Shown here in pieces: positions 1,875 through 47,781 of a stretch of 56,691 bases of DNA. The notes below the pieces were generated by a model. That model had not been told where the DNA came from, did not search any database, and was given only the letters and a program-made list of their open reading frames with translations. The stretch's first letter is position 1, and each line of letters begins with the position of its first letter. The position numbers were made by a program, and so were the translations under genes. This stretch comes from Vitrella brassicaformis CCMP3155 (taxonomy: Eukaryota > Protista > Chromerida), in the NCBI GenBank assembly GCA_001179505.1, contig CDMY01000533.1, forward strand, positions 1 to 56,691, written 5' to 3'.

Positions 1875-6804
<4,930 letters not shown>

Positions 6805-21519: not shown

Positions 21520-23081
21520 ATGAAACTGCCTCGAGGTGGTAGCGGCAGTGGCAGTTTGTACACCGGCAGTCCGTCCTGCTCCCTGTCGACCATCCGTCCG
21601 TCCCGCTCCCTGTCGGCCATCCCTGTGAAGGGTCCGAGTGCCGACAGTCCCCTTTCGCTGACACCTACCGGCTCAAGTCGTCGGATCACGGAAGACACCC
21701 AGCCTCTTCCACCTTGCTTACCAACCAAAGCTGCCGATGACAGTGTGCCGGTTGAGATCCGCACTCTGCCTGAGGAATGGGGATTTTGGACTATCGAGAT
21801 CTGCGGTCCGATAAAACTGGTCAGTCAGTTCAGTCAACCAAGAAAACGATGAGATCTATGTCCTGCTTCGTTCTCCCTTTTGTTCTGTTCAGTGGCTGAG
21901 GGACACTCCCGTCAACTCCCTCATCGATATTGTCCTCGCGGGTGCTGTCAACTATGCCTACTGCATCGTCACCGCGGATCTCATCGGCTCCGAAAGACTG
22001 CTTTATTGGTGGTTCGACATTGCCTGTCGATATCTCTGGCCGACATTGATCCTCGCGTTTAAATGCCTGGGTCATTTCCAGCCTCCACGCAGCGTCCTTG
22101 AAATGGTGCTTGTCAATATCGCCTGCATCGTCTCCGTCGGACTGGGCAGCTTCGCTCTATACATTGCGCCAATCGGACGTAAGAAACAACAATGGACAGG
22201 GACAATGAGCCAATCTCGCATGCATCGGCTGGGTATACCTCTTGTGAATAGGTCTGTTCACGTTTCTGTGGTACATCGGGGCGATTTGGTGCGGAGGATG
22301 CACCGTTTTAATCTGTTTTGTCCCAAGGTCATTTAAGGTCCCAACGAGTCCCCCCTCTCCTCGGGCCGACCGGTGTTGCATTCCTCGTCCGCATATCATT
22401 CAGCATATTCGCGCCAAAAGTTTTCACCTCTTCGATATGCAGACTCGATTGCGTATCAAAGACTCGCTCAGTCGTGTTCCTGCAAAGGCAGCGCCGTCGC
22501 AGTGGTAAGCCACTCGCGGACTTTCTTCGCTTATATCACCAACGACTCTCTCTTTCTCTGCCTGTGTGCATGTATGTCATCCCATTTGTCAGGAGAGATC
22601 AGTCAAACTCTTGCTGTTTTTCCTCGTGATGCTCGATTGGACTTCCGATCTTGCCGTCGGTGTTGACCTTGTCACTCGTGGGCTCCTCTGGCAATCCGTC
22701 ATCATCTTCGTCCTCTCTCTCTGCGACTGCATTGCGCTCAATGCCCACTGGCGTGCGCGGCCTCTGATGGAATTGTCCGTGAGATTCCATCTCATTACTT
22801 TTATCGTCTCGCTGGGAGAGATACCTATCGCCATCATTACCTTCATGTCCATGCCGGTGGATCAGTCGGACCTCAGTACACTCGTCCTCTACGTCCTTTC
22901 AATCGTCGTCACCTGTCTGATGGTCTCCTTCAAAGGAGGAATGCTGTTCGCCCAAATGAGGAGAGAGCGACTGAGAGAGAAACGGACGACGAGCAGCATC
23001 ACGAGGACCACCACGAGCACCACCACGAGCACCCCCACGAGGGAGTACTGCTTGGGCTCAGTCTCGCACCAAGTCACATAA
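21520..23081 (+). CDS. Multi-pass membrane protein of unknown function (4 exons; Ser/Pro-rich N-terminus, Thr-rich tail)
   Basis: Exons join as MKLPRGGS...GPIKL|WLRDTPVNSLIDIVLAGAVNYAYCIV...SFALYIAPIG|HLRSQ...RRS|ERSVKLLLFFLVMLDWTSDLAVGV...FKGGMLFAQMRRERLREK..., with roughly 7-8 hydrophobic segments. Confidence 0.7.
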
Positions 23082-23189
23082 GATAGGCCGTGAAGAGCAC
23101 GATCTTGTGAGGTTCAATCGAGTGGTGGCATGGGGTGTATTTCATTCGATGCTCTGCACACGTGAGGTGTGTGGTATGCTGGCGGGGTG

Positions 23190-23489
23190 NNNNNNNNNNN
23201 NNNNNNNNNNNNNNNNNNNNNNNNNNNNNNNNNNNNNNNNNNNNNNNNNNNNNNNNNNNNNNNNNNNNNNNNNNNNNNNNNNNNNNNNNNNNNNNNNNNN
23301 NNNNNNNNNNNNNNNNNNNNNNNNNNNNNNNNNNNNNNNNNNNNNNNNNNNNNNNNNNNNNNNNNNNNNNNNNNNNNNNNNNNNNNNNNNNNNNNNNNNN
23401 NNNNNNNNNNNNNNNNNNNNNNNNNNNNNNNNNNNNNNNNNNNNNNNNNNNNNNNNNNNNNNNNNNNNNNNNNNNNNNNNNNNNNNNNN
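23190..23489. other. Assembly gap (300 N)
   Basis: Run of N. Confidence 1.
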
Positions 23490-24308
23490 GGGGGGGGGAG
23501 AGGGAGGGGGATGATTGTAAGTTCTATTGCTTTTATCCGTGCTCTATCTTGACGTCCAAGGCAGGATTTGTAACTGTCTGGCGGTGGATTACGTGGAGTG
23601 ACTACTGTGTGTCGTGTGGTGGGTGGCCTTCGTGTGTTCGTGTCTTTTGTGCATTCGTGTCTTTTGTGCATTCGAGTCTTTTATGGATTCCTGTCTTTTG
23701 TGCATGGTGTCGATGCTCAAGCTCACGAATCCATTTGCCATACGTACACATAAAGCATATGGATGTGTATGTGCGTTTCGTAGTTTATGTCGCGTCTGAC
23801 AGAATGCCTTTACGACAGTCAGCCCATCGCCCCAGCTAGCATGGCAATGCGATGGATCATCCCGTGTAATCATGTTGGTACCTCTATATTACCATGCGGT
23901 GCAGGTAGATTGGTGAGTGGGTGAGTGTATTGTTGGTCGATAGATTAGTCGACTGGTTAGCGCTGGTCTCGGTCGTGCACAGTGGATTCGTGTTTTTATG
24001 ATGTAGTCAGAGAACCAGTAAATTTGTTTGGTTCTTCACCGCCACACACACAAATGCACGCTCGAACACGTCCACAGACCAGGCCCTCATGCACTTCGCA
24101 AACAAGAGACCACGACACCACATAAAAGCACATGTACCCGACGAAACTAACACGCAAGGTGACACGTATGTCCTCGGTTGGCGGGGCGGCTATTGGCCCT
24201 TACCACGGAGGACAACCACGTGAGCGCGCCTTGATTGGGCGCCGTGTGCCCCTTATGTCACGTCACGCATATTCTACTCAGACGTATTTGGCAAGCCAGG
24301 CAAACTAT

Positions 24309-31696: not shown

Positions 31697-33948
31697 ATGG
31701 GGCCTCGCCACAATCTGTTGGCGTGCCTTCTTCTGGTTGGGCTCTTCGGCTGCCCACCCACGTCCGCATGGGGGCTCAACCACACACGCGAGCACCTCCT
31801 GAGAAGGCTGCTTGGTAATGAAAAATGGCCCCCTTTCTCATGCCTGCCGTCTCCTGACATTGGTGCAGGTCCTCCTGAGGTATCTGGGGCGTGCAGGTGC
31901 TCTTCATGCGCCGACAAATATGGCCATCATGTGGACATACCGATGAAAGAGAGCCTCAGCGATGAGGATCGGCGTCTCAGCTGCGCCGCTCTGTGCGCGA
32001 GTGATCCAACATGCACCGGTTTTGAGGTGTGGCTAGCGCCTCGAGAGTCCAACTGTGAGGTGCATTGGACACCCATCGACTGGATTGACACATCGGCAGA
32101 CAACATCGAATGCTTCCCCAGACGAGGTGCGCAGATGTACTGATGTGCTGTCTGTGTCACCATGCCTCTTGATGTGGTGCCTGTGCGGTGTTTGCGTCTC
32201 GCTCTCTTAGGCTATGCGCCGGTGGATCTTGTAATTCTGCTTGATCGGTCTCTGTCGGTGAAAAGTAATGGGTGGAGCCTGGAGACGGAATTCACGCGAA
32301 AGCTGCTGGACGCGCTGCCCATTGCCCCGGGAGAGATCAACGTGGCCATTATCCACTTTGGAGCCGACACCTACTATGCCATGCCAGATGAGGTTCATAG
32401 CCACAAAGCCACATCCCCACGCTACAGAATGTCGGTTATCCCATATGTTGCCTATGCAGGCAATGTCGTCCTCTGGCGACTTCATCCAGACAAAGGAGGA
32501 GGCCCTGACGGCCATTGACAACCTTGCCGTCCTCGAGCTCGAGTACGGCACGGACCTCATCGGTGCTCTGCATGCCATGATCACCGTGCTCAAGACCAAG
32601 AGCCGCAAGGCCAAGCAGCAGGGAGAGCTGGTGTCGGTGGTGCCGTGGTTCGCCGTGATTATCACTGATGGCGAGAACACGCACCGCTGCAAGGAGGTCT
32701 CTGGGGAGACCTTCTGCATGCCGTCTGGGGAGTTCGTGAAGTGGAAGCATCACCCCAACTACCGCGGCAAGAACCCCTCATGGGTGGAGCAGAAGATGGA
32801 CCATGTCCTGGTATGTGGAAGGGGAAGGAATAGCCGCACAAATATGTTCTGGTCCCTGAGGGTTTGTCTGTGTGTTAGGCTGAGGTGCCTGAAGTGCGTC
32901 GTTTCTGCATCGGAGTGCGGCTCAAGACACAGAGAGGCCGGGTGAGCGATACACCGATGGATGCACACGTGTGGACGGGATGTCTGCGTGTCAGGATGAT
33001 TTGTGGGCGATGGCGAGCATCCTGAAGGAGGACCATGTGTTTGAGATCCTGAGCTTCGAGCTGCTTGACTACCTCATCGAACAACTGCTCATCCTCATTG
33101 GCTCATTCGAAAGTCAGTCAGTCAGCCAGCGACTGTCAGCCAGCCATTGATTAAGAGGAGGCATTTCTGCATGTGCGCGTGTGTGTGGTACGTGTCAGTC
33201 TGCGGGATAGAGAAGGAGTGGACTGAATGGATTTGCAACGTCGAGTGCGGCCAAGGCAGATACGTCCGGACTCGGATCGAGCGGGTGATGTCCTCACAAA
33301 GAGACCAACAAACGAACCAACGAACGACGGAAGGAGCACCATCGTTGATGGTTGTCCATGTCAATCAGGTGAGCCTGGGGCGTGATTGTGTCGGTGTGGG
33401 TGAGGGGACGTGGACGCGCGTGGTCAAGGAGTTCGACGAGACAGGCGGCATCTGCATCAACCCAAAAATGCCCGTCTGCCCTGACGGTCACGACGTTATC
33501 TGCCGCATTTTGTTGCTGGGCCTCGTGACCTACCCCGAGCTGGTCAAGTTCCTCATCAAACACATCGAGTGGTTTGAAGATATCATCACCAGCTGCGTCC
33601 ACATCAGTAATAATAACAAGTAACCGATACCAAAGGGAGCGATAGGTCCTCTCTGTCTGCAGGCACGTATTGCCCGATGCTGAACGTGACGTACATCAAC
33701 CCGCCGCCGTCATTCCTCGAGCACGTGTACCCGGCCTCGTATTTCGAGCTGATAAGCGAGGAGCTGATACTGCCGACGGTGGACCACACAGTGGAGTTCC
33801 AGGACATCCACAGGGCCCTCACGCACAGCGCGGCCATACCCAATGGAGTGGGCGACATCCACCTCAAGATGGCACACATGTTCACTGACGCGCCGCTCGT
33901 ACAGGTGGATCGATAGATGCATATACACATACACATCCAGATACACAG

Positions 33949-33991
<43 letters not shown>

Positions 33992-36900
33992 AAATACATA
34001 CACACATGCATACGTACATGTACGCGGTTGTTGTGTCTCGTGTCATATACGGACCCCGTCCGTGTGCAGGTGTTTCGAGTGACGACCCAGCGACAGTTCT
34101 CGCCCCTGCTGCCCAAAGAGGTGATCGACATGCTCGCGCACTGCGAAGGAGGTATGCATGCCACACACACACACACTGAAGACACCACCGTTGGATTCCA
34201 CTGCGTCTTTGCCCGGGCAGTGAGTGAGTGCGGCAACAAGGCGGGCATCGAGGGAGTGCTGTCGTCAAAGCTGCCGTCGGCCACATTCACACTTACGGAT
34301 GAGTCGTCTAGCGATCGATTCGCCGCCAAGCTGCAGTGCGTGACGCGGGAAGACGCAGAAGACAACCCGTACGACAACCCCCTGCCACCCACACCAGCAC
34401 CGCCACAAGAGAAACTCAGAGGTGACTCACCCACTGATTGACTCCCACACCCACGCACTCAAGCACACACCTGACTGTTTGTCTTTTGTCCCAGTGTGTC
34501 AGGATCTGAGTGAGTGGTCCGATTGGGAGTGTAACGCCGAGTGTGGCAAGGCCAGCCACGTGCGGACCAGACGGGAGAGGGTCGTCTTTGACACCTCGTG
34601 TGACGACGCCGAGGCGTCTCCATGGGACCGCCGAGCAAAGGAGTTCCGCGTGCCGTCGTCACCCGGTGATGATGGCCTCTGCCGCAGCGACCTTACTCGA
34701 TGCGCTTTCGGTCAGTGAATGGATGAATCCAATCGTCATGGATGTCTTGTCGTGTCGATGTCTGCAGGTGAGCGCACCAAGTGTGGTGGGTGGTATGCGG
34801 CAGCCCCTCACCGGCACTTCGAGTCGTTCCTCTCCGACCTCACAGGCACCTCATGCACCAAAATCAGTGAGACAACGAAAAAGAAAGAGACAGAATTCGC
34901 CACGAATCCTTCGTTCGTCAGGCCAGTACTGCCACCACATGAGCGTGACTTTCGATCCCGGCCACAAGGGGTGCAATCCGTGGTTGGACCTCCTCGAGAC
35001 CTTCTCGCCCGCACCTTTCCTCCTCACGTCAGAGCAGCTCTTCCTGAACGAGACTGCGCACACACTGCGGTATGTAATGGTTGAGACCGCCCAGTCGTCC
35101 TCCCAGTGCCTGAAGGACAGCATTGTGCTGGAGATGGGCAACCTCTACACATACAGGCCAACCATACGCGTAAGTGAGCCAAGCCATGCCAAGCCAAGCC
35201 AAGCCAAGGATAAGAAAAGTGGCTCCACGTGCTCGTCTTCTCTGTGCAGGTCTACCAGTCCTTACCTGGTGGTGGCCGTCTGCTGATCGCCTCATGCACA
35301 GGAGACACACGAACAGGAGCCAACACCAACACAGGTCAGCACAGAGAGAGAAAGAGAGAGGCAAAGAGGGAGCCGGAAACATGCCACACCCACAAATGCG
35401 GTGACTAGGGCTGCATTGTCTGCATTAGCTTGCAGGTGGGTCCCCAATCGCGTGCGACAGCGTCGGCACTCTCGAGGCGCTCGTCAAAGACCAGCGGCAC
35501 CAGGCAACCCTCACGCTGCAGGACGATGCATCGACAACCGTCGAGGTGCAGATGCAATGCATGAGCGACGCGGACCCCGACACGGGACAGCTGCCAGACG
35601 ACCCAAGTGAGCCCTGATATCCCGTGGGTGACCCGCACACCTTTATATGCCCAATTGTTATCCTCAATGCCCGGATGTGTGCAGTGGCCGTCGCGGAGAA
35701 CTTCAGTGAGTGGACTGAGGCCATTTGCACGGCGGCGTGCGGCGTCGGAAAACTCCTCAAGTCAAGGAGACAACTGGTCAGTATGTCGGAAAATCTATCC
35801 ATGTGTGCGTGGGTGTGTGTGATTGCCGCATGTGTCCTTCGTTATCAGGTGAGCCGTCGAGGGTGTTTCATCCGCGGCTTGTACAGGAAGCTGTTCCGTC
35901 GGTGGATGCGCAAGGCCAAGGAATTCGACCTGCCAGTCACGCCTGAATTCTGCAGCCCATACACATGTATGTACGTGCGCACACAGACAGGCATACTCGG
36001 CAGAACATGCGTGTGTATCCATTCAGGTCCCGAAGTGGAGTGCAGCATCCCTTATCCGCTCTTCCCCATCACAAACAGACCTGAACCCAACGATAAACGC
36101 AACTGCCTCTCAGAAGGTACGCGGCTGCATCGGGGGGAGCAGGTGACGACGCTTCTCCATTTCCTTCCATGGCATATATGTAATATGCAGCTGATTTCAT
36201 CACCGGCCTGATCGCCACGTACGACATCGACTATGCCTCCGGCCCCCTGGCCACCCTCCCCGCCCTCTCGCCACAAGAGTTCGGCCTGCACCGGATTGAC
36301 AACACAGACAACGGCAAGTGTATGCTGCTCAGTTACCGCAGCGGCCAGGGGTTGGCTGGCAGCAGCGGCAGCAACATCGAGCTGGACTTCAACGAGATGG
36401 ACACGGACAATCCCACAAGAGTGCAGCTGTACGACCGGGGTGAGGGGAACGGCACCACGACCGCGACGATGCTCGGAAGCTGCGACGGCGACTCCAGGCT
36501 CATTGCTGAAGGTGAGCGTTGAGTGTTGCAGGACATATCAGCATGCTGTGATTGCGTGCCACGTAGGTCCCAGCTGCACCTCCTTCCTGGGACCCGGCAG
36601 CCTGGCGATCATCTTCTACCGGGCCTACGAGCCGGACACTTTCTCGTTCGTAACGTTCGTGTCCATCTGTCAGGGCACACAGGTCGTCTTCACCAACAAC
36701 GGGTGGAAGCGGGATGACGGCGGCTTCAGAGAGAGCGAGGACCGCTTCACCTGGACGGCGCCCACGGAGGTGACGCCCGGCGAGGTGATCACTTTCATGA
36801 GCCTCATCGCCGCAAGCTACCTGCGGCTCGGTGACAATGGCGACCAGATCTTTGCGTACCAAGAGCGCAGTGATGGGGAAATTGTGTTCATTTATGGGGT

Positions 36901-39900
36901 GAACAACAAAGGGGAGAAGGTGTGGCAGGATGACGCCACAAACGACAAGACGTCCAGCCTGCCGTCGATACTGGCCAAGGGGCCTTTCCACATGCCGCTG
37001 AAACAGAACCCCTGCATACGGTAGCGATGCAGACGGACAGGACAACACACACACAGACAGGTCAATATTGATGTCTCTCTCTCTCTTTTTCTGTGCGTGT
37101 GTGAATGTCGTCTTTGCAGGTATCTGGGTCCGACCGAGGGGTCGACGGCCTTTCTGCTGTCGAGCATCGCTGACCATGGGCACTGGGGCTGGACGGACAA
37201 CACCGACGACACATTCATTCCCGCATGCCCATTCGCAATCACCGACGCAGGGCAACCAGGTCCGTCATCATATGACACGGACAAGAGACATATTTTTTGT
37301 GCCTGTGCAGAGAGTGGCTTTTACAGCGGGTCGAGTGCGTGCGAGAACATGGAACAGGTGACGATGGTGCTGATGAACGAGGCCCCCGAGGCGTCGCTGA
37401 CACTCTTCTCAGAACAGGGTGACCAGGTGCGCATGGTCCTCACGCCCGCCGCACCCGCACTCGAAGAGCCACAGCCACCAGACAACACCACCGAGCCGGG
37501 CCCCAAGCCGACAGCCCGGCCCCCTCCGCCCCCCAACGGCACCACCGATGCCGCGTCGTATGTGTTTGAGGGTGGGGAGGTGCTCAATTGCGACGGCAGC
37601 GGTATGGAGCTGTGCATCCCGCTGGCCAACGAGGGGCAGCACATCAACAGCTGGACCTGGAACAACATGGACGACACACAGACCTGCAGGTCGACCATCC
37701 GATGGCGCCAGCCGCCCGGCGTCGAGGCCTCGTCTTTGTACAGCTGTCTCTGGGCACCCCTTGCGCAGAACCCATGCAATGGTGTCCAAGAGACCACCGT
37801 GTGGACGTCACCGGACCACCCCGACGTCCCGTACATACTCATACGCAACACAGCCGGGTCAGCCAGACACACAAACCAAGAGAGAGGAGAGACCGAGGTG
37901 GAGAGTGGCATTTGTGCAGGATAGCGAAGGGTGAGGTGATCATATCTCCTGGGGACACTAGTGTGCGCTACACAGTGGAGTGTCTGTACCAGGGTGGATA
38001 TGGCACCTCAGTCGTGGTGGCCACGGACCAGAGGCAGGCCGTCGTCATACACGGTGAGCCCTGTCTGTCAACCACCCTTCATCACACCGTGGCCACATGC
38101 AAGTGATGTCTCCCGTGTCTCGTCCCTCTCTCTTTCACAGACTTGCCGCTCGGCGCCGTGGCGTCCTTCACATTCGACCAAGGCCTGGCACGCAACCTCG
38201 TCTCAGCATCACGACCTCCCTTCGCCCTCTCAGCAACCGACATGGCCTACAACGGCCCCACAGTGATCAGAGACGGCCTGACAATCCTCTCGGAGTGCAC
38301 CACAGCGTCATTCCAGCTCTTTACCAAGGCGGATGGCACCAGCAGCAGCGACATCGAGGCCTTCACTGTGGTAATGTCAGTCCGTGTGGACACGTGGCCG
38401 GAGGGGTGGGACAGCGCAGTGCCGCTGCTAAGTGTGACGAGGGGAGAAGGGGGCGACTCTGTGGCGCTGCTGGATGCGATCGCCGCGAATGCGACCACGG
38501 GGGACGACCCGAGATGCCCCAATGTGGGCGAGGTCAGGGCGAGCACTGTGTGTGCGGCGGGGCTGGACGTCACCGTCCTGACGCCGCTCACCCTCATTTT
38601 CACCACGGTAAGACGAGGGCGGACCAGGGAACCGCCATGTCTGCATTCATTGCCCTTCGGTTCATCAGACAGAGGGCCTGCGTGTGTACGTGGGGTCATC
38701 GAGGGTGTACAGTGACCCGGCTCTCCGAGTGGCGATTGATAAAACCTCCACATTCACCCTCGGCAGCCCCATGGGCAAGGTCCCCGATGAGACCGGGACC
38801 CTTTTGCAGTCGTGTGATGTTACTGTCGAGAGCCTCTACAGGGGACCGCAGCTCATCACGCCCGATGGGGTGTTCCCCGCACACGGGGCCACTGATGTGC
38901 CTCTGGACCAGCGCACCTTGGTGGCCTTCTTGGACCGGCAATTCACCGTCAATCGCCCCTTGCAGGTGAGACGATGACGGCAGATTTGGTCTGGTGGGTG
39001 TGAGCGCCTGTCTGTCTCTCTAGGTGATGGTCTTTACCATTCCCGCATCCACAATCGACGTGCCGAGCCCACCCCCCGTGTTTGTTGCCCGCTTCACCAA
39101 AAGAGGCGAAGGGAAAGGAGACATGAAGACGATGGTGTCGGTCAGGGAGTCGGTCATGACGGTCAGGCTGCCCCTGCACATGGTCCCGTCCACCCGGTAC
39201 CAAGTCGTCATCCCGGCGGGCAGCGTCGCAGACACACACGGGCAGCTGCTCAAGACGCGCATCGAATGGCGATTCACGACGACCGACGGTAGCCTCCCTG
39301 ACAACAGGTGACTGGCTGGATGGAACGCATGCGTGGAGGTGTGCTGATGTTGTGCTATGTCTCTTTGTGCAGCCCCCCCGTGCGTCTGTCATCCTCCTTC
39401 CCATCAAACGGAGTGACCGATGTGGACCCTAGAGGCCCGATCGTCATTCCCTTTGACGGGCCCGTCACACGTGGGTATGGCGCGATCACCATCCGGCCCA
39501 CGGACCACTCCAACGACACCCACCAATCATCGCTGCGCGACCTTGCCCTCACAATTGCCATCGAGGACAAGTCGCTTGTGCACGTCCAAGAAGACGTGAT
39601 GGTGGTCCACCTGCCGTCCCCCCTCTTCCCCTACACCACCTATGAGACACTGCTTCCCGCCTATTCCCTGTTCGACCATGCCGGCAACCCTCTGCAGCCC
39701 CCGGGCATCTACATCCGCTTCAGCACGTGGGACAACGAAACACTCGACGAGACGGCAGCAGAGGCAGGAGGCGTGCTCTCCCCCAATGAGTGGGACACAC
39801 AGCCGCCGTCGCTCTTGCACTTTACAAGCGTGTCCCCAACCGTCACCGACGTATACCTGGAGATGGTTTTCGATGAGGATGTCCGTGTTGTGCCGGGGTG

Positions 39901-42900
39901 GGTCTACATCGCCTCTGTGGAGGGGCTGGAAGAGAGACCGATGCCTGTGTGGCTGAGCAATGACGCTGTCGTGGGATCGCATCTAGTCGTCAGGGCGGCT
40001 GGTGTGGCTGCCGGCCTGGGGTATAGTGTCATTGTGCCCCGCAGCCGCATTCGAGACCACGCAGGCAACTTCTTTGCTGGACTGAGGTGAGGTGAGGTGG
40101 AAAGAGCGGACGCCGTGTCTCTGTCCTATGCATCAATTATGTCCGCGACACGCAGATACGGCGACAGGACCTTCACCGTCCCTCAGACGACCACCAGCCC
40201 TTCGCCGTTACGTCTCGTCCGTGACCTGTCCTACCCTCCCCCCGACTCCACCCGGCTGCCCCCCACCTCACCCGTCATCCTCACCTTCTCCCACGCCGTC
40301 TGCCGCCCCTCCTTTCCCTCATACATCCTCGTCAAGCCCGTCCAGGCGCCCGGCCGTTCAGCCATAGCGTCTCTTGTCGACACATCAGACAGCGAGCAGG
40401 TGCGCATCGAGGGGCCGTCCGTGTTTCTGAGCCTCAGGCCATGGCTCACGGGCGGCACTATATATGAGATGGTGCTGCTGGAGGGCACCTTAACCGACTG
40501 CAGGGGTGGCAGGTCTCCTCCAGTCGGGGAGAGTGTGGGAGGCGAGGCTTTTTCCTTCTCTGTCGGCGCGCCTACTGACGGCACACCACCCACATTGGTG
40601 CAGCTGTCGCCTGTTGCGGGTTCAGCTGACGTGGAGACATCGCTGCGATCGCTTGTGCTGGCTTTTGACGAGCCAGTCGTCATCGCGCCGCGAGCCACCC
40701 AGTCCATTGGGATATCCCGCGGCGGCCAATCAGATAGGGAGATAGGCCGTGAGCACGTTAAGGCGTTCGGGAGTGTTGTGGTGATTGAGCTGGAGAGTGC
40801 CTTGCGGCCCGGTGGCGATTATGGCGTGTCGATTCCCGTCGGGCTGATAATGGACTATGCCGGCAACGTCTTCAGCTTCTACAGCAAGTGGGAATTCAGC
40901 ACATCCGCTCTGCCGACGGCATCTGCCAGCCCTTTGGCTCTGCTGAGTGCCTTCCCGCAGAGCCTCGCAGTCGGTGAGCCGCTGACTCTTCTCTTCAACG
41001 AGACGATCAGCATACACGTCACCGGCCAGGCAATCGAAGTGCGGCCGACCAACGACGAGCACGCGCCATTCCACATTCGAGACGACGGCTATTTCTACCA
41101 AGGAGAGCTGGGGAGTGCGCAGTGGACCGAAGGAAAAGGGAGCCTCATTGCCACTGACGGCGGGCTGGCGGTGCTTTCCTTCCCCTACCCCCTGGGCCCA
41201 TCTCTCTCATACAATGTCACCCTTCCCGCCGGTCTATTCACTGGTCTAAACGGGTCTTTGTCAAGCGAGACGACCATCAGCATCGACCTCTCTGCAGCAG
41301 CCGATGCCGCCGATCAAGAGCCGCCTCGAGCACTGTATTTCTTTCCTCCGCCCGAGGGCATCCCTCTGGTGTCATCGGACATCATCGTGAGCTTCACAGA
41401 AGACATTGCCCCATCCCTCAATGTGGAAGAACAGCAGCAGGTCACCCTGAAGCCAGATGGAGGGGCCGAGGAAGCCGTCCCCTTCACGATCAAGGGCAGC
41501 GTGCTCATTGCGACGCCTGCATCGGTTCTGCAGCCGTCCACTGCATACACCCTGACCATCCCACAGACAGCCATCACCGACCTCTCGCGCAATCCCATGA
41601 CCGGCGATGTCGTCTACGCCTTCACGACCGGCCAGCCGCCATCCAGTGGTGAAGAAGAGGACACTCGTGGCCCGGCTGTGTTGCCTGGAGGCGTTTTGCC
41701 CCCACAGGACGCCACGGATGTCCCTCCCTCTGTGTCGTTCGTGGTGGTGTTTGACGGGCCTGTGATAGTTGTTGGGGGCGTGCTGGCGTTCGCCGCTGCT
41801 GAGAGGCCTGGCGTGGATCCCATCTTTGTGGATCTGCATGACGCCGAGAGAGTGTGGCTTGGCGGCAGTGCTGGCAACCACATCATGATTGTCGCTCTCG
41901 AGAGGCACCTGCTGCCAGACACACAGGTAGGAGGCGGGGAAACATGGATGGATGGATACACAATCTCTGATTGTGCGTGTCTGTGTGTGCAGTATACCGT
42001 GACAGGGCCACTGGGTCTTCTGGAGGATGCGTCAGGCAACGCTCTCACTTACGATGTCTCAACACAGGCAGGGCGATTCACAACCGGCGCCCCGTCAGCC
42101 GTCCCCCCAACGACGCTCACCACCCCGACCGCCCCCCTGGTCCTCAGCCACGCGGCCCCCATCCCTCCCGTGCAGCTCGACACACCCACGGGGGATATTA
42201 TCCTCTCCTTCCCTCACCCATTCACACGTGGCAGCGGGGTGATTGAGGTGGTTCCTGAATCGATCGACGGTCTGTGGCCCCCATCGCTGTCGTTCGATGC
42301 TGCCAAGCAGACGGCGACCGACATGGACGTCACGAGTGAGGGCCATGTGGGGCTGCTGGGCGGCGGGCGTGTTGTCAAGGTGCGGCTTGGGTCGGTGGGT
42401 GTGCGGCTCACTCAAGGGGGTGAGTACAGGATACGGTCGTCAGAGGGGGCCCTCTTGGTGAGTGAGTATGAAGACTGGAGAACGGACGACCTGAGACACA
42501 AATGTCTTCCCTGCCTTGGTTGCTTTCAGGCGCTTCAGGGCCGCAGCTCCCTGTCTGTCGATGCCTCCATATCAGTGGCCGATGCACCATTAACAGGAGA
42601 CACCGACGACGAAGAGGCATATGCCACCATTCAGCCGCAGAGCGTCACGCCCCCACGTCAATCAACCTCGCCGTCCTCCACCCCCGCATCTATCGTGCTG
42701 CACTTCCCCGCCCCTGTCATCGCCGCCGCCGCCGCGTGCCGCATCTTCGTGTGGCCCCACACACAGCAGGTGGCACCCGAGGGGAGAGCCGCTGTGGACA
42801 GCCAGGCTGTCATCGATCTGACAGACTCAGCAAAGGTGCAAAGCACGGTCAGAAAGGCTGAAATATGCCCCGTGACGTGACATGTGGTGTCTGTTGTGCT

Positions 42901-45900
42901 CAGGGGATGGTGCGTGGAGGTGTGGTGGCGGCTAACGTGCCCTTTCTGCGGCCGTCGACCACATTCAGGGTGCAGCTGCACCCGCCAGACCGATGTCTGC
43001 AAGACGTGGTCAGCCACTCATTCGTCGAGTGGAGCGCGCAGGACGACTGGACATTCACCACTGGCCCCGCTGCTGCAGTCCAACCTCCCAAACTTCTCAA
43101 AAGTGAGTCTTCGCCCCCCAGACAGATCTCACCTTGATGTGTGGCTGTGGTGCATGCAGCCTTCACCGTGCCAGCTGCCGTCCTGTCCAGCAACGCGGTG
43201 CCCGCAGAGCTTTCTGACGCATCAGCCCCCGCCCATCCCGCCATCCTCGTTGCCGTTTTCGACACTCCCATCAGAGTGGCCGAGCGGGCCTTCGGCACCA
43301 TCCGGCTGCCCGACGGGTCTGCACGGGCATTCCACAGCCCGCAATGCGACTCGTTCTGCCAAGTACTCACTGTCCTCTCCCCTGCGGTGCTGTCCCCCAT
43401 TGTTACGTATTTGGTGACACTGGAAGGGCGGTCCCTGCTCACAGACGATGGGAGGCCAGTACAGCAGGGCTATGAGTGGAGTGTGCAGGGCCCTGAGACG
43501 GAAAATGGGGAGGGTGGCGGTGCAGCGACGGCTGAGGTGTTTCCAGTGGCCGGCAGCTCGGATGTGTCCCTCACACCCGTTCTAAGTAGGTGGGCTACTC
43601 TCGTGAGGGGGGAAATCAGCGAACAACTTCATCCATAATTGTCGTGCTGGTGCGGCAGGAGCGTACATGGGCACATCGACGAGTTGGTACCTGACGAGCT
43701 CCCCAGACGTGTCGGTGAGTGTGTCGTCTTCTTCAGCGGCCTTTGCCCCCTATACCATCCCCCTAAACTCTCACCACGTACGCAGCACGCAGAACGCATC
43801 CACTGTGCCTTCGTATGGGGACCAATGAGACACAATGGACGGCTGGACGGATGATCTCTCTGTCCATGTCTATCCGTCTGTCTGTCTGTCTCTTTAGGTG
43901 GGGTCCGTGGGCCCTTTCCTGCATGTGTCGCTGCCATCAGTGCTCCCCCCCTCCCAGACCATCATCGTCACCCTCCCTGCACAGGCCATCAGGACCATTG
44001 CCGACGGCACCCCGCTGCTGCAGTCTGACATCGTGTGGCGCTTCAGCACTGAGGCAGCCGATGGGGGCGGCACAGCATGGGATGGTGTCATCGACAGGGT
44101 GCCCCTACATCGCGCCAGAGACGTGGCGACCGACACACACATGGTTGGATCATTCGGATGCGCAAGTGTATGTGACCATCCGGTATTGTCCAAGGGTCTG
44201 TCTCTGTCGACTTGACTGATTGCAGCGGTTGGTGTTTGACCGGGCGGTCTATCTGGAGGTGGCCCACAATTCCCCCCACATGTTGGCACTGACCCCCATC
44301 GAGAGGGATTCCCTGGTCCCCCAGAAGCAGAGAGGTTCCGTCGATGCTGCCGCCCTACCCACCATCCAAATCCCTCTCAACGACACACAGCAGGCAGGCA
44401 GCCAGCATGCCTTACCACCCCATCCCACATACCGATCTGCCCTTTTCTCAGGTCATGATATCCGGCTCAGTGTTGGTGGTGACACCTCGGCTGCCGCTAT
44501 TCCACGCCACCACTTATAGCGCCACCATCAGCAGCACCGCACTGCTGGACAGCCGAGGGGCGGCGTGGGAGGGTATCGACGGCACCGCCCGTCAGTGGCG
44601 CTTCACGACAAGGAATGTCATCCGTCGGCTCAGTGATGTCACGCCTCCCACACTGCGTGTGACCTCCATACGCCCGGCTGTGAGCAAAACACACACACAC
44701 AGAGACTGTGCCTTAACCTACGTCTCTCTGTCATGTGTATGTGTGTAATGTCAGCCCGGCAGCCGCCATCTGCCGCTGTCGACATCGCAATTTGTGATGC
44801 GGTTCACCGAGCCGGTGCTGCCGGGGAGTGCGGCAAAGTCGGCAGCCGTCAGCTTCAGACCAGCAGACACATCAAAGGACACCATCCACGTCTACACCGA
44901 CGACCCAATGCACGTAAGGACCTATGTGCCGACCGTTGTTGCGATGGATGATGTGTGGACGGTGGCTTGTCACGGTGGGTGGTTTGTCTGATTGCTGTCA
45001 GGTGCGGATTGACGGCAGCAGTGTGCAGGTGTTGCTTCCCCAAAGGCTGGAGCCCTCCACTGTCTACACGGCCTACTTCAGCAAGACAGCCTTCACCGAC
45101 CTCGCCGGCAACCAGGCGCAATACGGTCAGCCACTCTCTCTCTCTGTGTGCGTGTGTGACCGCATCCCTGCCCTCACGCCCATATCGATGTCTGCAGACT
45201 CCCGTTGTGTGGTGGAGGTGACCGACACCGACATAACGGCCGTCGCCCTCAAGACCCTCCCCAACTCCAGCCCCACCCACTGCCGCGCACAGTGCTACCT
45301 CACACCCGCATGTGGTGGCTTCATTCTCATCCAGGGGGACCCACTGAACAAATGTTCCCTCAAGGCCGGCCCCGTCATCGACACACACATCAAACCGGGG
45401 ACAGCCACGTACTACGGGGGCTACATGAGGCAGTGCTGGGAGGTACATGGCTTCCCGGAGCCCACTACGGCCGCTCCTGGGGATGAGGAGCGCAGGCGGC
45501 TGCAGGCCATCGATGAGACAGGTATGGTATATTGGTGTGTGGGGGTGTGGGGGATGAGAAGGCGATCGAGACGGTGATGTGTTGGTTGTGTGCTCGTCAG
45601 TGCCCCACCATGGGTCGTTCTGGCGCTTTGAAACCAAGCCGCTCGCCGATTCCCCATCCACCGAACCCATTGGCAGCCGCACGGGGCCCTTTGCTGCGTC
45701 TGTGACATTCGGCCGTTTTGCTCTGTATGATAGGGACTTTTCTGCTGCTGAATTGCCGCCTCCCGGTAAAGTCGCCTGCCAGCCGCTTGTCTTTCTGTGT
45801 GTGGGAATGTATGGCGCTGCTGCCTCTGCATTCTGCATTCTGCATTCATGCAGCGTCGGTCGCTTCATACCGGAACGGAAGCTTCGCCGTGACGCTGGAC

Positions 45901-47312
45901 CTCTGCATTGACGAAACTTGCGGCGAGACGCAGCAGCTGACCCAGCCCTTCGTGTACCCAACCGACTCCCCAGAGTTCTACGTCAAAGCAACGACTGACG
46001 TACGTGTGTAGGGGTCGACGAGACGGCCTCCTGTCGGTGTGGAAGCTCTCTGTCTCTGTTGTGTTGCAGGTGCCGGGTGTGTACCCAGTGTTTCGTGCGT
46101 GTTATGCGCTGCCGATTCCCCCCTCCTCACCGCTAGAAGAGCTCCTCGAGCGGCGCATCACGCTGCTGCAACTGGCGTGCGGCATCCCCGCCGACCCTCA
46201 GTCGAGTCCCTTCGGCTTCGTCCAGGAGTCCTTCATCGGCCAAGCGTACGCCAGCTTCTTCACCATCGACATCAGTGAGGTGTCGCCCTCATCGCAGCAG
46301 CTGCTCTATCTAGCGTGCGATGTCGACCTCTGTCTCGATCCAAGGTGCCTGGACGACCCTGTCGATACCTGCCCCACTGGACAAAGGTACGTACGATGGG
46401 CAATGCACCCATTGGAAGTTTGATATATCGATGGACGTGTGTTGGTTGTGTAGGCGTCTGCAGGCGTCCGGCGGCGCGAGCGCCTCGGTGCTCACTTCCA
46501 AGGGTCTGCAGATGGGGCCCATTCTGCAGCAGGGCCAGCAGGCCCGGAAGGTCTACCCCGACGGGACCATCTATGACAATATCAACGACCAGGTCATCGT
46601 CAAGGGCAGCTCATGGCGAGACGACACCGACGAGACACGGGCGAACCATCTCCTTCTCTATGTTGGCGTGAGCCTGGGGGCTGCTGCGGTCTTGCTCTTG
46701 ATTGCCAGCATTGTTTACTTCAAGCGGCGTCGGAAAAGGGGGGCAGCACCGCTATTCGCGGCGAGCAAAGATGTGTCTTCTCGTGACGGCCAATTTGACA
46801 TCGATATACCCTCGTCGGCCACCAAGCCGGCCGACCTATCGCCCTCGCGGCCCGCAGCGAGGATAGTGGGACAGTCTACACGTTTCTCTGACCATGGCTT
46901 AGATAACGAGGCAGAGGACAGCAGCCCCGCGTCTGGATCTTCGCATGTCCCTGATGACGCCCCAGTTGAGGAGAGGAGGGGCTCTCATCTGTCAGCACTG
47001 AGCCACCTGCGGATTCTTGTGGGTGCGTCTCAGCGACACATGTCTCTCGGTGACAATCGCGACGATGGCGATGACGATGACGAGTCAACGCCCCTCGGGT
47101 CAAGTGACGGTAGAGAGGCGCTGCCTGCTGGTCTGAAGCGCAGGTCGTTGTCGAAGCATGGCGACGAAGAGAGTAGCCCTTACGCGTCTTCAGAGAAAGA
47201 AGATGTACATGTGGGCGAGGAGACGAGACATCAAGGCGTTGACCAGGGGTTTCGGTCGAGCATCGTGAGTGCGACAGGTGTGCCGGCTGTCAATCTGGAT
47301 GACTTCAGCTAG
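31697..47312 (+). CDS. Giant multi-exon type-I transmembrane adhesin-like protein: SP - PAN - vWA - 3xTSR - bacterial-type module - LamG-like - ~14 Big_5-like Ig - PAN - ZP-C-like - TM - acidic tail
   Basis: Signal MGPRHNLLACLLLVGLFGCPPTSAWG; vWA DLVILLDRSLS...GTDLIGAL...IITDG; TSR WTEW.C...CG.G..RTR x3; Ig repeats xPxxGxTDV...LxFD...YxVxIPxxxxxDxAGN...FTT; TM LLLYVGVSLGAAAVLLLIASIVYF followed by KRRRKR; stop TAG 47310-47312. No second signal peptide or obvious gene break was seen, but not every junction was checked. Confidence 0.8.
32210..32810 (+). other. vWA (integrin I/A-type) domain with intact MIDAS within the giant adhesin
   Basis: DxSxS = DRSLS; T in YGTDLIGAL; D in VIITDG. Confidence 0.9.
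33945..33995. repeat. Intronic (CA)n(TA)n microsatellite
   Basis: Directly visible. Confidence 0.9.
38860..45125 (+). other. Tandem array of ~14 bacterial SbsA/Big_5-like Ig domains
   Basis: Repeated pattern, e.g. SFPSNGVTDVDPRGPIVIPFDGPV...TTYETLLPAYSLFDHAGN...RFST; DGTPPTLVQLSPVAGSADV...LAFDEPV...GLIMDYAGN..WEFST; LQPSTAYTLTIPQTAITDLSRN...YAFTT. Confidence 0.8.
45854..46386 (+). other. Zona pellucida C-terminal (ZP-C)-like domain
   Basis: Two exons: GSFAVTLDLCIDETC...PEFYVKATTD|VPGVYPVFRACYALP...LLQLACG...ASFFTI....LLYLACDVDLCLDPRC......C. The Cys and hydrophobic spacing follows the ZP-C pattern (judged by eye). Confidence 0.6.
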
Positions 47313-47781
47313 CTAGTGACGTACGTACGTACGTGTAGAGTAGTGTTTGGGACGGAGTGTGTGACGCGTCATATGCGAACTGTGTCTGTCCATATATGGG
47401 ACAAACTGGCTGGTGGTTGAGGCCGTGTGACGCTTTGTAATGATTATGATCTGATTGCAACAGTCAGTTGACGTGTACACATGCGGTCTGCGGTACTGTG
47501 CACACACACACACACGACGAGTCCACGTGAAAAGCAGCATAAACAACCACCGGATATAAAACGCAGACAGCGATTCGTGAACCTGCTGGACGACACGAGT
47601 AGATGGATGGATGGAGAGTGGATGCAATGGCCAGCTTACCTTCACTTCTCCTTTGCAATTGCTGGGAATCGACGAGAGACGGCCACACAACTGATACGTA
47701 CACAGGATCCCCAGCCCCAGAACTATAAGCCATAACCACAATGTGTGGTCCTGCTGAGACGAGAGCTTGTAGTACAGGGAC

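What the first reader, a model, noticed from the sequence alone, without database searches (positions are those of the whole stretch)
45854..46540. Zona-pellucida-C-like domain with cleavage site and hydrophobic patch in a protist
Seen: GSFAVTLDL (IHP-like start), FYV, CYALP, LLQLACG, FFTI, LLYLACDVDLC..C..C, then RRLQ, then a short hydrophobic GLQMGPIL before the TM. Known: the same order (ZP-C, basic cleavage site, external hydrophobic patch, TM) controls release and polymerisation of animal ZP proteins, which are regarded as essentially metazoan. No ZP-N was recognised. Inference: a non-animal ZP-C homologue or striking convergence, possibly controlling shedding or assembly of the ectodomain.
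Basis: partly seen in the sequence, partly recalled or inferred. Interest (0 to 1): 0.85.

Follow-up and report, generated by a model that had tools for sequence, protein, structure and literature searches.

The report
Standalone ZP-C domain in Vitrella adhesin
The part next to the membrane of a giant surface protein of the alga Vitrella brassicaformis, a free-living relative of malaria parasites, is very probably a ZP-C domain with its cleavage site and blocking strand, a building block that reviews still treat as confined to animals.

Summary
Window 45854-46540 covers the last exons of a 44-exon gene (31697-47312, + strand) for a 4145-aa protein of Vitrella brassicaformis. Public records name only its VWA and Big_5 domains. 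RNA contigs confirm two of the splice junctions.

Residues 3713-3855 match Pfam PF00100 (ZP-C) from end to end (profile 2-132 of 133). The E-value is 5.4e-4 at 20.5 bits, below the curated cut-off of 24.6, and no other family hits at E<=10. A protein-language-model search puts the domain among animal ZP-C clusters at 0.95. With ZP families removed the best score is 0.59; Reeler scores 0.49 and DOMON 0.42.

All six canonical ZP-C cysteines are present, with spacings close to a published nematode alignment. They are followed by RR four residues after Cys8, an LQMGPI strand like uromodulin's VLNLGPITR, and a membrane anchor. No ZP-N was found, so this is a standalone ZP-C preceded by a PAN domain.

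The fold could not be tested. No relatives were found for an alignment, and both AlphaFold runs failed at pLDDT 33-34.

RRLQA occurs only twice in the protein, and the two copies flank the ZP-C unit.

The scan has already noted ZP modules on other DNA of this genome.

The parts
31697..47312 (+). Whole gene: 44 exons, 4145-aa type I membrane protein (signal peptide, VWA, TSP1-like repeats, many Big_5 Ig-like repeats, PAN, ZP-C, TM, acidic tail)
   Evidence: P0001 maps exactly onto the window. Named as a Vitrella brassicaformis CCMP3155 protein. Pfam domains.
45206..45436 (+). PAN/apple domain, residues 3546-3622, six Cys, directly upstream of the ZP-C unit
   Evidence: PF00024 E 0.0014, 18.9 bits, below the cut-off of 21.4. 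Cys at 3546, 3571, 3575, 3581, 3595, 3622.
45494..45508 (+). First RRLQA (residues 3642-3646, preceded by a third R), between PAN and the ZP-C unit; candidate second protease site
   Evidence: Only two RRLQA in 4145 aa. Chance of one in a shuffled ectodomain is about 0.0024.
45600..45765 (+). Exon 41, residues 3651-3705: Cys-free linker with strand-like FAASVTFGRFALY; possible counterpart of the ZP-N/ZP-C linker
   Evidence: Exon mapping. Junction to exon 42 seen in an RNA contig. The role is an inference.
45874..46372 (+). ZP-C domain, residues 3713-3855 (exons 42 and 43, intron 46000-46069 inside). Cys 3723/3728 (extra pair at strand A), 3765 (Cys5), 3791 (Cys6), 3837 (Cys7), 3842 (CysA), 3847 (CysB), 3855 (Cys8)
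   Evidence: PF00100 E 5.4e-4, profile 2-132/133. ESM Atlas 0.95 to ZP-C clusters. Cys positions compared with PMC7456536.
45880..45906 (+). IHP-like strand A, SFAVTLDLC (3715-3723), with an NGS sequon at 3713
   Evidence: Hydropathy peak at 3719-3721. It lies at the start of the Pfam match. A Cys in strand A is moderately conserved in nematode ZP-C.
46385..46466 (+). Second RRLQA (residues 3860-3864, the codon of R3860 is split by intron 46387-46453): candidate cleavage site four residues after Cys8
   Evidence: Sequence. The position matches the CCS of ZP proteins. Cleavage is not shown.
46485..46526 (+). EHP-like strand SVLTSKGLQMGPIL (3871-3884)
   Evidence: Sequence. LQMGPI resembles the mouse uromodulin peptide 599-VLNLGPITR-607, which lies beyond the cleavage site.
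46650..46721 (+). Transmembrane helix (3926-3949) followed by KRRRKR
   Evidence: Hydropathy and sequence.
46722..47312 (+). 196-aa cytoplasmic tail rich in Ser and Asp, no Trp, then the stop codon
   Evidence: RNA contigs cover 46586-47475.

Best explanation
The last about 500 residues of this giant Vitrella surface protein hold a genuine but divergent ZP-C domain without a ZP-N. It sits between a PAN domain and the membrane anchor. I put homology at about 0.8. After Cys8 it keeps the animal layout: a basic site (GQRR|LQA), a short strand (LQMGPIL) that would complete the ZP-C sandwich as strand G (the EHP), and a TM helix. My reading of the mechanism is an inference, at about 0.45. The EHP keeps the ZP-C closed while the protein travels to the surface. 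A subtilisin- or furin-like protease then cuts at RR, which releases the ectodomain from the EHP-TM stump. The opened groove can take a donor strand from a partner, plausibly one of the ZP-N-bearing ZP proteins that the scan notes report elsewhere in this genome. This would tie the adhesin into an extracellular matrix or wall. The second RRLQA upstream of the linker may allow a second cut that separates the adhesive part from the ZP-C unit. The confidence of 0.6 given here is for the statement as a whole.
For: Pfam: PF00100 is the only family at E<=10. It scores E 5.4e-4 and 20.5 bits, with residues 3713-3855 on profile positions 2-132 of 133. It appears in every sub-range tried, and no other part of the protein hits it at E<=1. 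The family was named beforehand, so the per-model probability is about 2e-8 (my arithmetic: E divided by 24736 models). ESM Atlas: the top hit scores 0.95 with 205-207 of 256 shared features. Every family-bearing cluster listed is a ZP cluster, and the first is a nematode ZP-C-only cluster. With ZP families left out the best score is 0.59. Cysteines: strand-A Cys to Cys5 is 42 residues (41 in the nematode alignment), Cys7 to CysA 5 (5), CysA to CysB 5 (4), CysB to Cys8 8 (8). RR lies 4 residues after Cys8. LQMGPI lies 15 residues further on and resembles uromodulin VLNLGPITR. The topology is type I. The gene is transcribed and spliced. RRLQA occurs only twice and flanks the unit, with different codons at the two sites.
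Against: The Pfam score is below the gathering threshold of 24.6. There is no structural support: both single-sequence AlphaFold models had pLDDT 33-34. No sequence relatives were found anywhere, and no PDB hit by phmmer. Conservation, and so selection on the motifs, cannot be shown. RR is only a dibasic site and not the furin consensus R-X-K/R-R. The EHP-like stretch is weakly hydrophobic, with no hydropathy peak. Without a ZP-N the protein cannot form a canonical head-to-tail ZP homopolymer. The FXF motif is not clearly placed: FGF at 3802-3804 or FFT at 3817-3819.
Confidence: 0.6

Rival explanations
1. The domain is a true ZP-C but serves only as a rigid stalk or binding domain, like the ZP-C of endoglin or betaglycan or the nematode ZP-C-only proteins. 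The RR site is not used. Any release is by cleavage inside the membrane, as in TRAP/MIC2 adhesins.
For: There is no ZP-N. ZP-C domains that work alone and bind proteins are documented. The TM has a run of small residues, SLGAAAV. The N-terminal half is TRAP-like, with VWA and TSP1. RR is a weak protease consensus.
Against: The full set of CCS position, EHP-like strand and TM is kept. The CCS five-residue motif recurs on the other side of the unit, which is hard to explain if the site is not used. The tail lacks the Trp near the C-terminus that TRAP-family tails carry (the Trp rule is from my own knowledge).
Confidence: 0.25
2. It is not a ZP-C homologue. It is an unrelated or convergent Cys-rich beta-sandwich that happens to match the profile weakly.
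For: The Pfam score is under the threshold. There is no structural confirmation and no pairwise hit to any ZP protein. The tool notes that a third of shuffled proteins get ten best hits from one family, and about 1 in 100 get a first hit of 0.95.
Against: Two different methods agree. The profile match runs end to end. Six cysteines fall at the canonical spacings. The flanking CCS, EHP and TM order is right. The next-best families score 0.59 or less.
Confidence: 0.12
3. It is a true ZP-C, but taken recently from an animal (chromerids live with corals) and not old in alveolates.
For: No alveolate relative of this particular domain was found. The nearest language-model clusters are all animal.
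Against: The domain is split by introns and fused in frame to a gene with apicomplexan-type VWA and TSP1 parts. It is under 30-bit similarity to every animal sequence searched, which does not fit a recent transfer. Unchecked scan notes report ZP modules in this genome with relatives in gregarines and Cryptosporidium.
Confidence: 0.1

Closest known systems
Uromodulin (UMOD) ZP-C with consensus cleavage site and EHP
   Same: Six ZP-C cysteines (Cys5-Cys7, Cys6-Cys8, CysA-CysB). A basic site a few residues after Cys8 (586-RFRS-589 in UMOD, GQRR here). Then a strand with L-x-[LM]-G-P-I (VLNLGPITR in UMOD, GLQMGPIL here). Then a membrane anchor.
   Different: UMOD has a ZP-N and a structured linker, is GPI-anchored, and forms homopolymers. 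This protein has no ZP-N, has a TM helix with a 196-aa tail, has an extra Cys pair at strand A, and carries about 3700 residues of other domains.
Nematode standalone ZP-C proteins (T01D1.8, F46G11.6, CUTL-19; PMC7456536)
   Same: A ZP-C without a ZP-N. Extra cysteines stabilise the region of strand A and the AB loop. The top language-model hit is a nematode ZP-C-only cluster.
   Different: Those are short secreted or GPI-anchored animal proteins that arose by loss of ZP-N. This ZP-C sits at the end of a giant multidomain TM protein in an alveolate.
PAN+ZP and vWFA+ZP proteins of animals (LET-653, NompA, CUTL-28, cuticlins)
   Same: A PAN domain lies directly upstream of the ZP part, and a VWA domain is in the same protein. 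Both combinations are among the four main nematode ZP architectures (Atlas clusters).
   Different: The animal proteins normally keep a ZP-N (CUT_N). Here PAN is followed by a Cys-free linker.
TRAP/MIC2-family adhesins of Apicomplexa
   Same: Type I membrane protein with VWA and TSP1 modules, a single TM and an acidic tail.
   Different: No known member has a ZP-C, a Big_5 array or a PAN next to the membrane. The tail here lacks Trp.

Membership tests
ZP-C domain (Pfam PF00100) | Profile match at or above Pfam's gathering score | tested here: not met
   20.5 bits against a cut-off of 24.6. It is still significant as an E-value (5.4e-4) and is the only family listed at E<=10.
ZP-C domain (Pfam PF00100) | Match over the whole domain, not a local Cys-rich patch | tested here: met
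   One stretch, residues 3713-3855, on profile positions 2-132 of 133.
ZP-C domain (Pfam PF00100) | Cys5, Cys6, Cys7, CysA, CysB and Cys8 at the canonical spacing | tested here: met
   Cys 3765, 3791, 3837, 3842, 3847, 3855. The spacings 5/5/8 after Cys7 compare with 5/4/8 in PMC7456536. Which cysteines pair was not testable.
ZP-C domain (Pfam PF00100) | Ig-like beta-sandwich fold superposable on UMOD or ZP3 ZP-C | tested here: inconclusive
   Two single-sequence AlphaFold runs gave pLDDT 33.0 and 33.9. No fold search was run on them.
ZP-C domain (Pfam PF00100) | Similarity by an independent method | tested here: met
   ESM Atlas 0.95 with 205-207 shared features to ZP-C clusters. The best score without ZP families is 0.59.
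ZP-C domain (Pfam PF00100) | Conserved FXF motif in the ef loop | tested here: inconclusive
   Candidates are FGF at 3802-3804 and FFT at 3817-3819. No residue-level alignment to the profile was available. In UMOD the motif is 553-FRF-555.
ZP precursor C-terminal control unit (CCS + EHP + anchor) | Basic cleavage site just after Cys8, then a hydrophobic strand, then a TM or GPI anchor | tested here: met
   RR at 3860-3861, LQMGPIL at 3878-3884, TM at 3926-3949. Shown as sequence only; cleavage was not tested. RR is dibasic, not R-X-K/R-R.
Canonical ZP module (ZP-N + ZP-C) | A ZP-N domain with four Cys upstream of ZP-C | tested here: not met
   No PF23344 or PF25057 hit at E<=1 across residues 1-3960, nor at E<=10 across 3620-3715. 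There is no Cys between 3623 and 3722.
Canonical ZP module (ZP-N + ZP-C) | Polymerisation into filaments | not testable with these tools
   Needs expression and microscopy.
TRAP/MIC2-like adhesin | VWA plus TSP1 ectodomain, one TM, acidic tail with Trp near the C-terminus | tested here: not met
   VWA E 8e-14. TSP1 hits are only weak. The tail is acidic but has no Trp.

The most novel reading that the evidence does not exclude
The cleavage-gated strand-exchange machinery of ZP proteins (ZP-C closed by an EHP, opened by a cut at a basic site) is older than animals and works in alveolates. In Vitrella it would load a giant adhesin onto a ZP-type polymer built by the ZP-N-bearing paralogues. Two matching RRLQA sites would let one protease first activate the ZP-C unit and then cut it off.
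Probability: 0.2. Interest if true: 0.85.

Novelty: new variant of a known kind. Interest (0 to 1): 0.65.

Why it matters
[quoted passage not shown] I found no paper that links ZP domains to chromerids or apicomplexans. The public record of this protein carries no ZP annotation.

A ZP-C that keeps its cysteines, cleavage site and blocking strand in a relative of malaria parasites would have one of two meanings. Either the module's origin lies far below animals, or there was an old transfer between kingdoms. It would also give a unicellular system in which to ask what a ZP-C does without a ZP-N. Surface proteins of this lineage, and how they are shed, matter for parasite biology as well.

Tried and rejected
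**Structure**
- AlphaFold on P0001:3545-3935 and on 3672-3895, both single-sequence, gave pLDDT 33.0 and 33.9.
- I ran no fold search on them, because matches to such models mean nothing.

**Searches for relatives to build an alignment, all empty**
- phmmer of exon 43 against 1.84 billion representatives found only the protein itself.
- Three word-indexed searches in three length classes found nothing.
- The scan of metagenome contigs found nothing.
- phmmer against PDB gave only a chance hit to Maf at E 2.

**Steps not possible or not taken**
- I could not obtain real animal ZP-C sequences as tool objects, so there was no profile-profile comparison and no residue-level alignment.

**Readings rejected**
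- DOMON, Reeler or Calx-beta as a better match: scores 0.42-0.59 against 0.95.
- A hidden ZP-N in the linker: no Cys and no Pfam hit.
- An animal contaminant: the exons are in frame with the rest of a 44-exon gene that holds VWA, TSP1 and Big_5 domains, and long DNA contigs of two studies carry the locus.
Full report
**What is there.** The window is a whole 56,691-base contig of Vitrella brassicaformis CCMP3155. The + strand from 31697 to 47312 carries one gene of 44 exons. Its public product, P0001, has 4145 aa and is named only "unnamed protein product" or "VWFA domain-containing protein". It maps onto the window without a mismatch. The single mismatch reported comes from the tool reading the first GTG of my exon query as Met (one search shows MPGVYPVF).

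The stretch 45854-46540 starts at the first base of exon 42 and ends just past the EHP-like strand in exon 44. The three introns I inferred by eye are 45766-45853, 46000-46069 and 46387-46453, and they are the ones in the public model. Spliced contigs from two runs carry junctions 45765|45854 and 45999|46070. Long DNA contigs from two other studies are colinear with the window. The gene is therefore real, transcribed and spliced. The last junction was not covered.

**Architecture.** Pfam finds a VWA domain (E 8e-14), weak TSP1 repeats, and many Big_5 Ig-like repeats (E 1.7e-52 and 2.4e-20 in two slices). It also finds a PAN domain at 3546-3622, with E 0.0014 (below threshold) and six Cys. After PAN come these parts, in order:
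- a Cys-free linker (3623-3712)
- the Cys-rich domain in question (3713-3855)
- GQRRLQA
- a short strand, SVLTSKGLQMGPIL (3871-3884)
- about 40 polar residues
- a TM helix (3926-3949) followed by KRRRKR
- a 196-aa Ser/Asp-rich tail without Trp

**Is it a ZP-C? Profile search.** Exon 43 alone hits PF00100 (ZP-C) at E 0.029. The spliced domain hits it at E 0.0042, 0.0017 and 5.4e-4 depending on trimming. The best score is 20.5 bits, with residues 3713-3855 aligned to profile positions 2-132 of 133. No other family appears at E<=10. The score is below Pfam's gathering cut-off of 24.6, so this is not a formal Pfam member. However, the family was named in advance, so the relevant probability is roughly E divided by 24,736 models, about 2e-8 (my arithmetic). 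The match is also end to end. No other part of the 4145 residues hits PF00100 at E<=1.

**Is it a ZP-C? Language-model search.** The ESM Atlas feature search gives a top score of 0.95 with 207 shared features for exon 43. For residues 3700-3900 it gives 0.95 with 205 shared features and a recognition value of 2585. Every family-bearing cluster listed is a ZP cluster. The first hit for the whole domain is a nematode ZP-C-only cluster. With six ZP families left out, the best score falls to 0.59 (Calx-beta). Reeler scores 0.49 and DOMON/Reeler 0.42.

**Cysteines.** The domain has Cys at 3723, 3728, 3765, 3791, 3837, 3842, 3847 and 3855. Published work gives three typical ZP-C disulfides: Cys5-Cys7, Cys6-Cys8 and CysA-CysB. 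In a trimmed nematode alignment a strand-A Cys sits at column 105, Cys5 at 146, Cys7 at 201, CysA at 206, CysB at 210 and Cys8 at 218 (PMC7456536). The table compares the spacings.

| Interval | Nematode alignment | This domain |
|---|---|---|
| Strand-A Cys to Cys5 | 41 | 42 |
| Cys7 to CysA | 5 | 5 |
| CysA to CysB | 4 | 5 |
| CysB to Cys8 | 8 | 8 |

All six canonical cysteines can therefore be assigned. Cys 3723 and 3728 form an extra pair at the IHP strand, a region where extra disulfides have arisen repeatedly in animals. Which cysteines actually pair was not testable.

**The control unit after the domain.** In uromodulin the site 586-RFRS-589 is cut after F587. This releases the external hydrophobic patch (EHP), which blocks polymerisation. 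The EHP is strand G of ZP-C and is later replaced by a linker strand of the next subunit (PMC7737619 and PMC4755741). In mouse uromodulin the peptide 599-VLNLGPITR-607 lies beyond the cut at F588. Here RR lies four residues after Cys8, and GLQMGPIL starts 15 residues after it. The shared core is L-x-[LM]-G-P-I. The stretch is only mildly hydrophobic, and RR is not a furin consensus.

**A new observation.** RRLQA occurs exactly twice in the 4145 residues, at 3642 and 3860. The two copies lie on either side of the linker plus ZP-C unit, and they use different codons. The second is split by an intron. The chance of RRLQA turning up anywhere in a shuffled ectodomain is about 0.0024. Dibasic pairs are otherwise rare, with none between residues 1832 and 3430. 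This points to a specific protease motif, but it is not proof.

**What could not be shown.** No relative of this domain was found:
- phmmer against 1.84 billion representatives
- three length classes of the 5.8-billion-protein index
- metagenome contigs
- PDB sequences

Without an alignment, both AlphaFold runs failed at pLDDT 33.0 and 33.9. The fold, the disulfide geometry and the placing of the EHP as strand G are therefore untested. I could not see the residue-level Pfam alignment, so the FXF motif is not placed; the candidates are FGF at 3802-3804 and FFT at 3817-3819.

**ZP-N.** None is present. There is no ZP-N or CUT_N hit at E<=1 across residues 1-3960, nor at E<=10 across 3620-3715. 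There is also no Cys between 3623 and 3722. This is a standalone ZP-C. That state was described in animals only in 2020, for nematodes. PAN+ZP and vWFA+ZP are two of the four main nematode ZP architectures, and both partner domains occur in this protein.

**How it most likely works.** This part is inferred. The EHP-like strand closes the ZP-C during export. A cut at RR|LQA frees the ectodomain from the EHP-TM stump and opens the groove. A partner with a ZP-N and linker then supplies the missing strand and fixes the adhesin in a matrix or wall. The upstream RRLQA may allow the adhesive part to be cut away from the ZP-C unit. I put homology at about 0.8 and this mechanism at about 0.45. The main rival, at 0.25, is a ZP-C used only as a stalk or binding domain, with release if any inside the membrane; the TM has SLGAAAV. 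Chance or convergence gets about 0.12.

**Novelty.** A 2026 review treats the canonical module as a metazoan synapomorphy and mentions only incomplete ZP-like domains in a choanoflagellate. Full-text searches found no paper linking ZP to Vitrella, chromerids, apicomplexans or alveolates. The protein's precomputed Pfam list lacks PF00100.

This scan has noted ZP modules on other pieces of the same genome. Among them are complete ZP-N plus ZP-C proteins and another giant surface protein that ends in a ZP-C. Those notes are unchecked by me. I used them only as the source of the idea that ZP-N-bearing partners exist.

Noticed in passing
window 45494-45508 and 46385-46466: RRLQA occurs only twice in the 4145-aa protein and brackets the linker plus ZP-C unit. 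The codons differ, and the second copy is split by an intron. Chance is about 0.0024.
   Followed up: partly
window about 39100-44600 (protein residues 1832-3430): There is not one dibasic pair (K/R-K/R) in about 1600 residues of the Big_5 repeat region. This could reflect selection against protease sites in the stalk.
   Followed up: no
window 46387-46453: If the last intron is retained, the frame reads 14 more residues and stops. That would give a secreted form ending just after Cys8, without cleavage site, EHP or TM. No read evidence for or against.
   Followed up: no
window 46650-46721: The TM helix has a run of small residues (SLGAAAV) near its outer end, as in substrates of intramembrane rhomboid proteases. 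The 196-aa tail is acidic but has no Trp.
   Followed up: no
window 45874-45882: An N-glycosylation sequon (NGS, N3713) sits right at the start of the IHP-like strand of the ZP-C.
   Followed up: no
window 22001-24000: G+C drops to 0.44 with a strong AT skew (-0.215), against 0.5-0.6 elsewhere on the contig.
   Followed up: no
window 31871-32128 (protein residues about 75-105): By eye, a second PAN/apple-like Cys pattern (CAALCASDPTCTGFEV) lies near the N-terminus, before the VWA domain. Pfam did not list it at E<=1.
   Followed up: no
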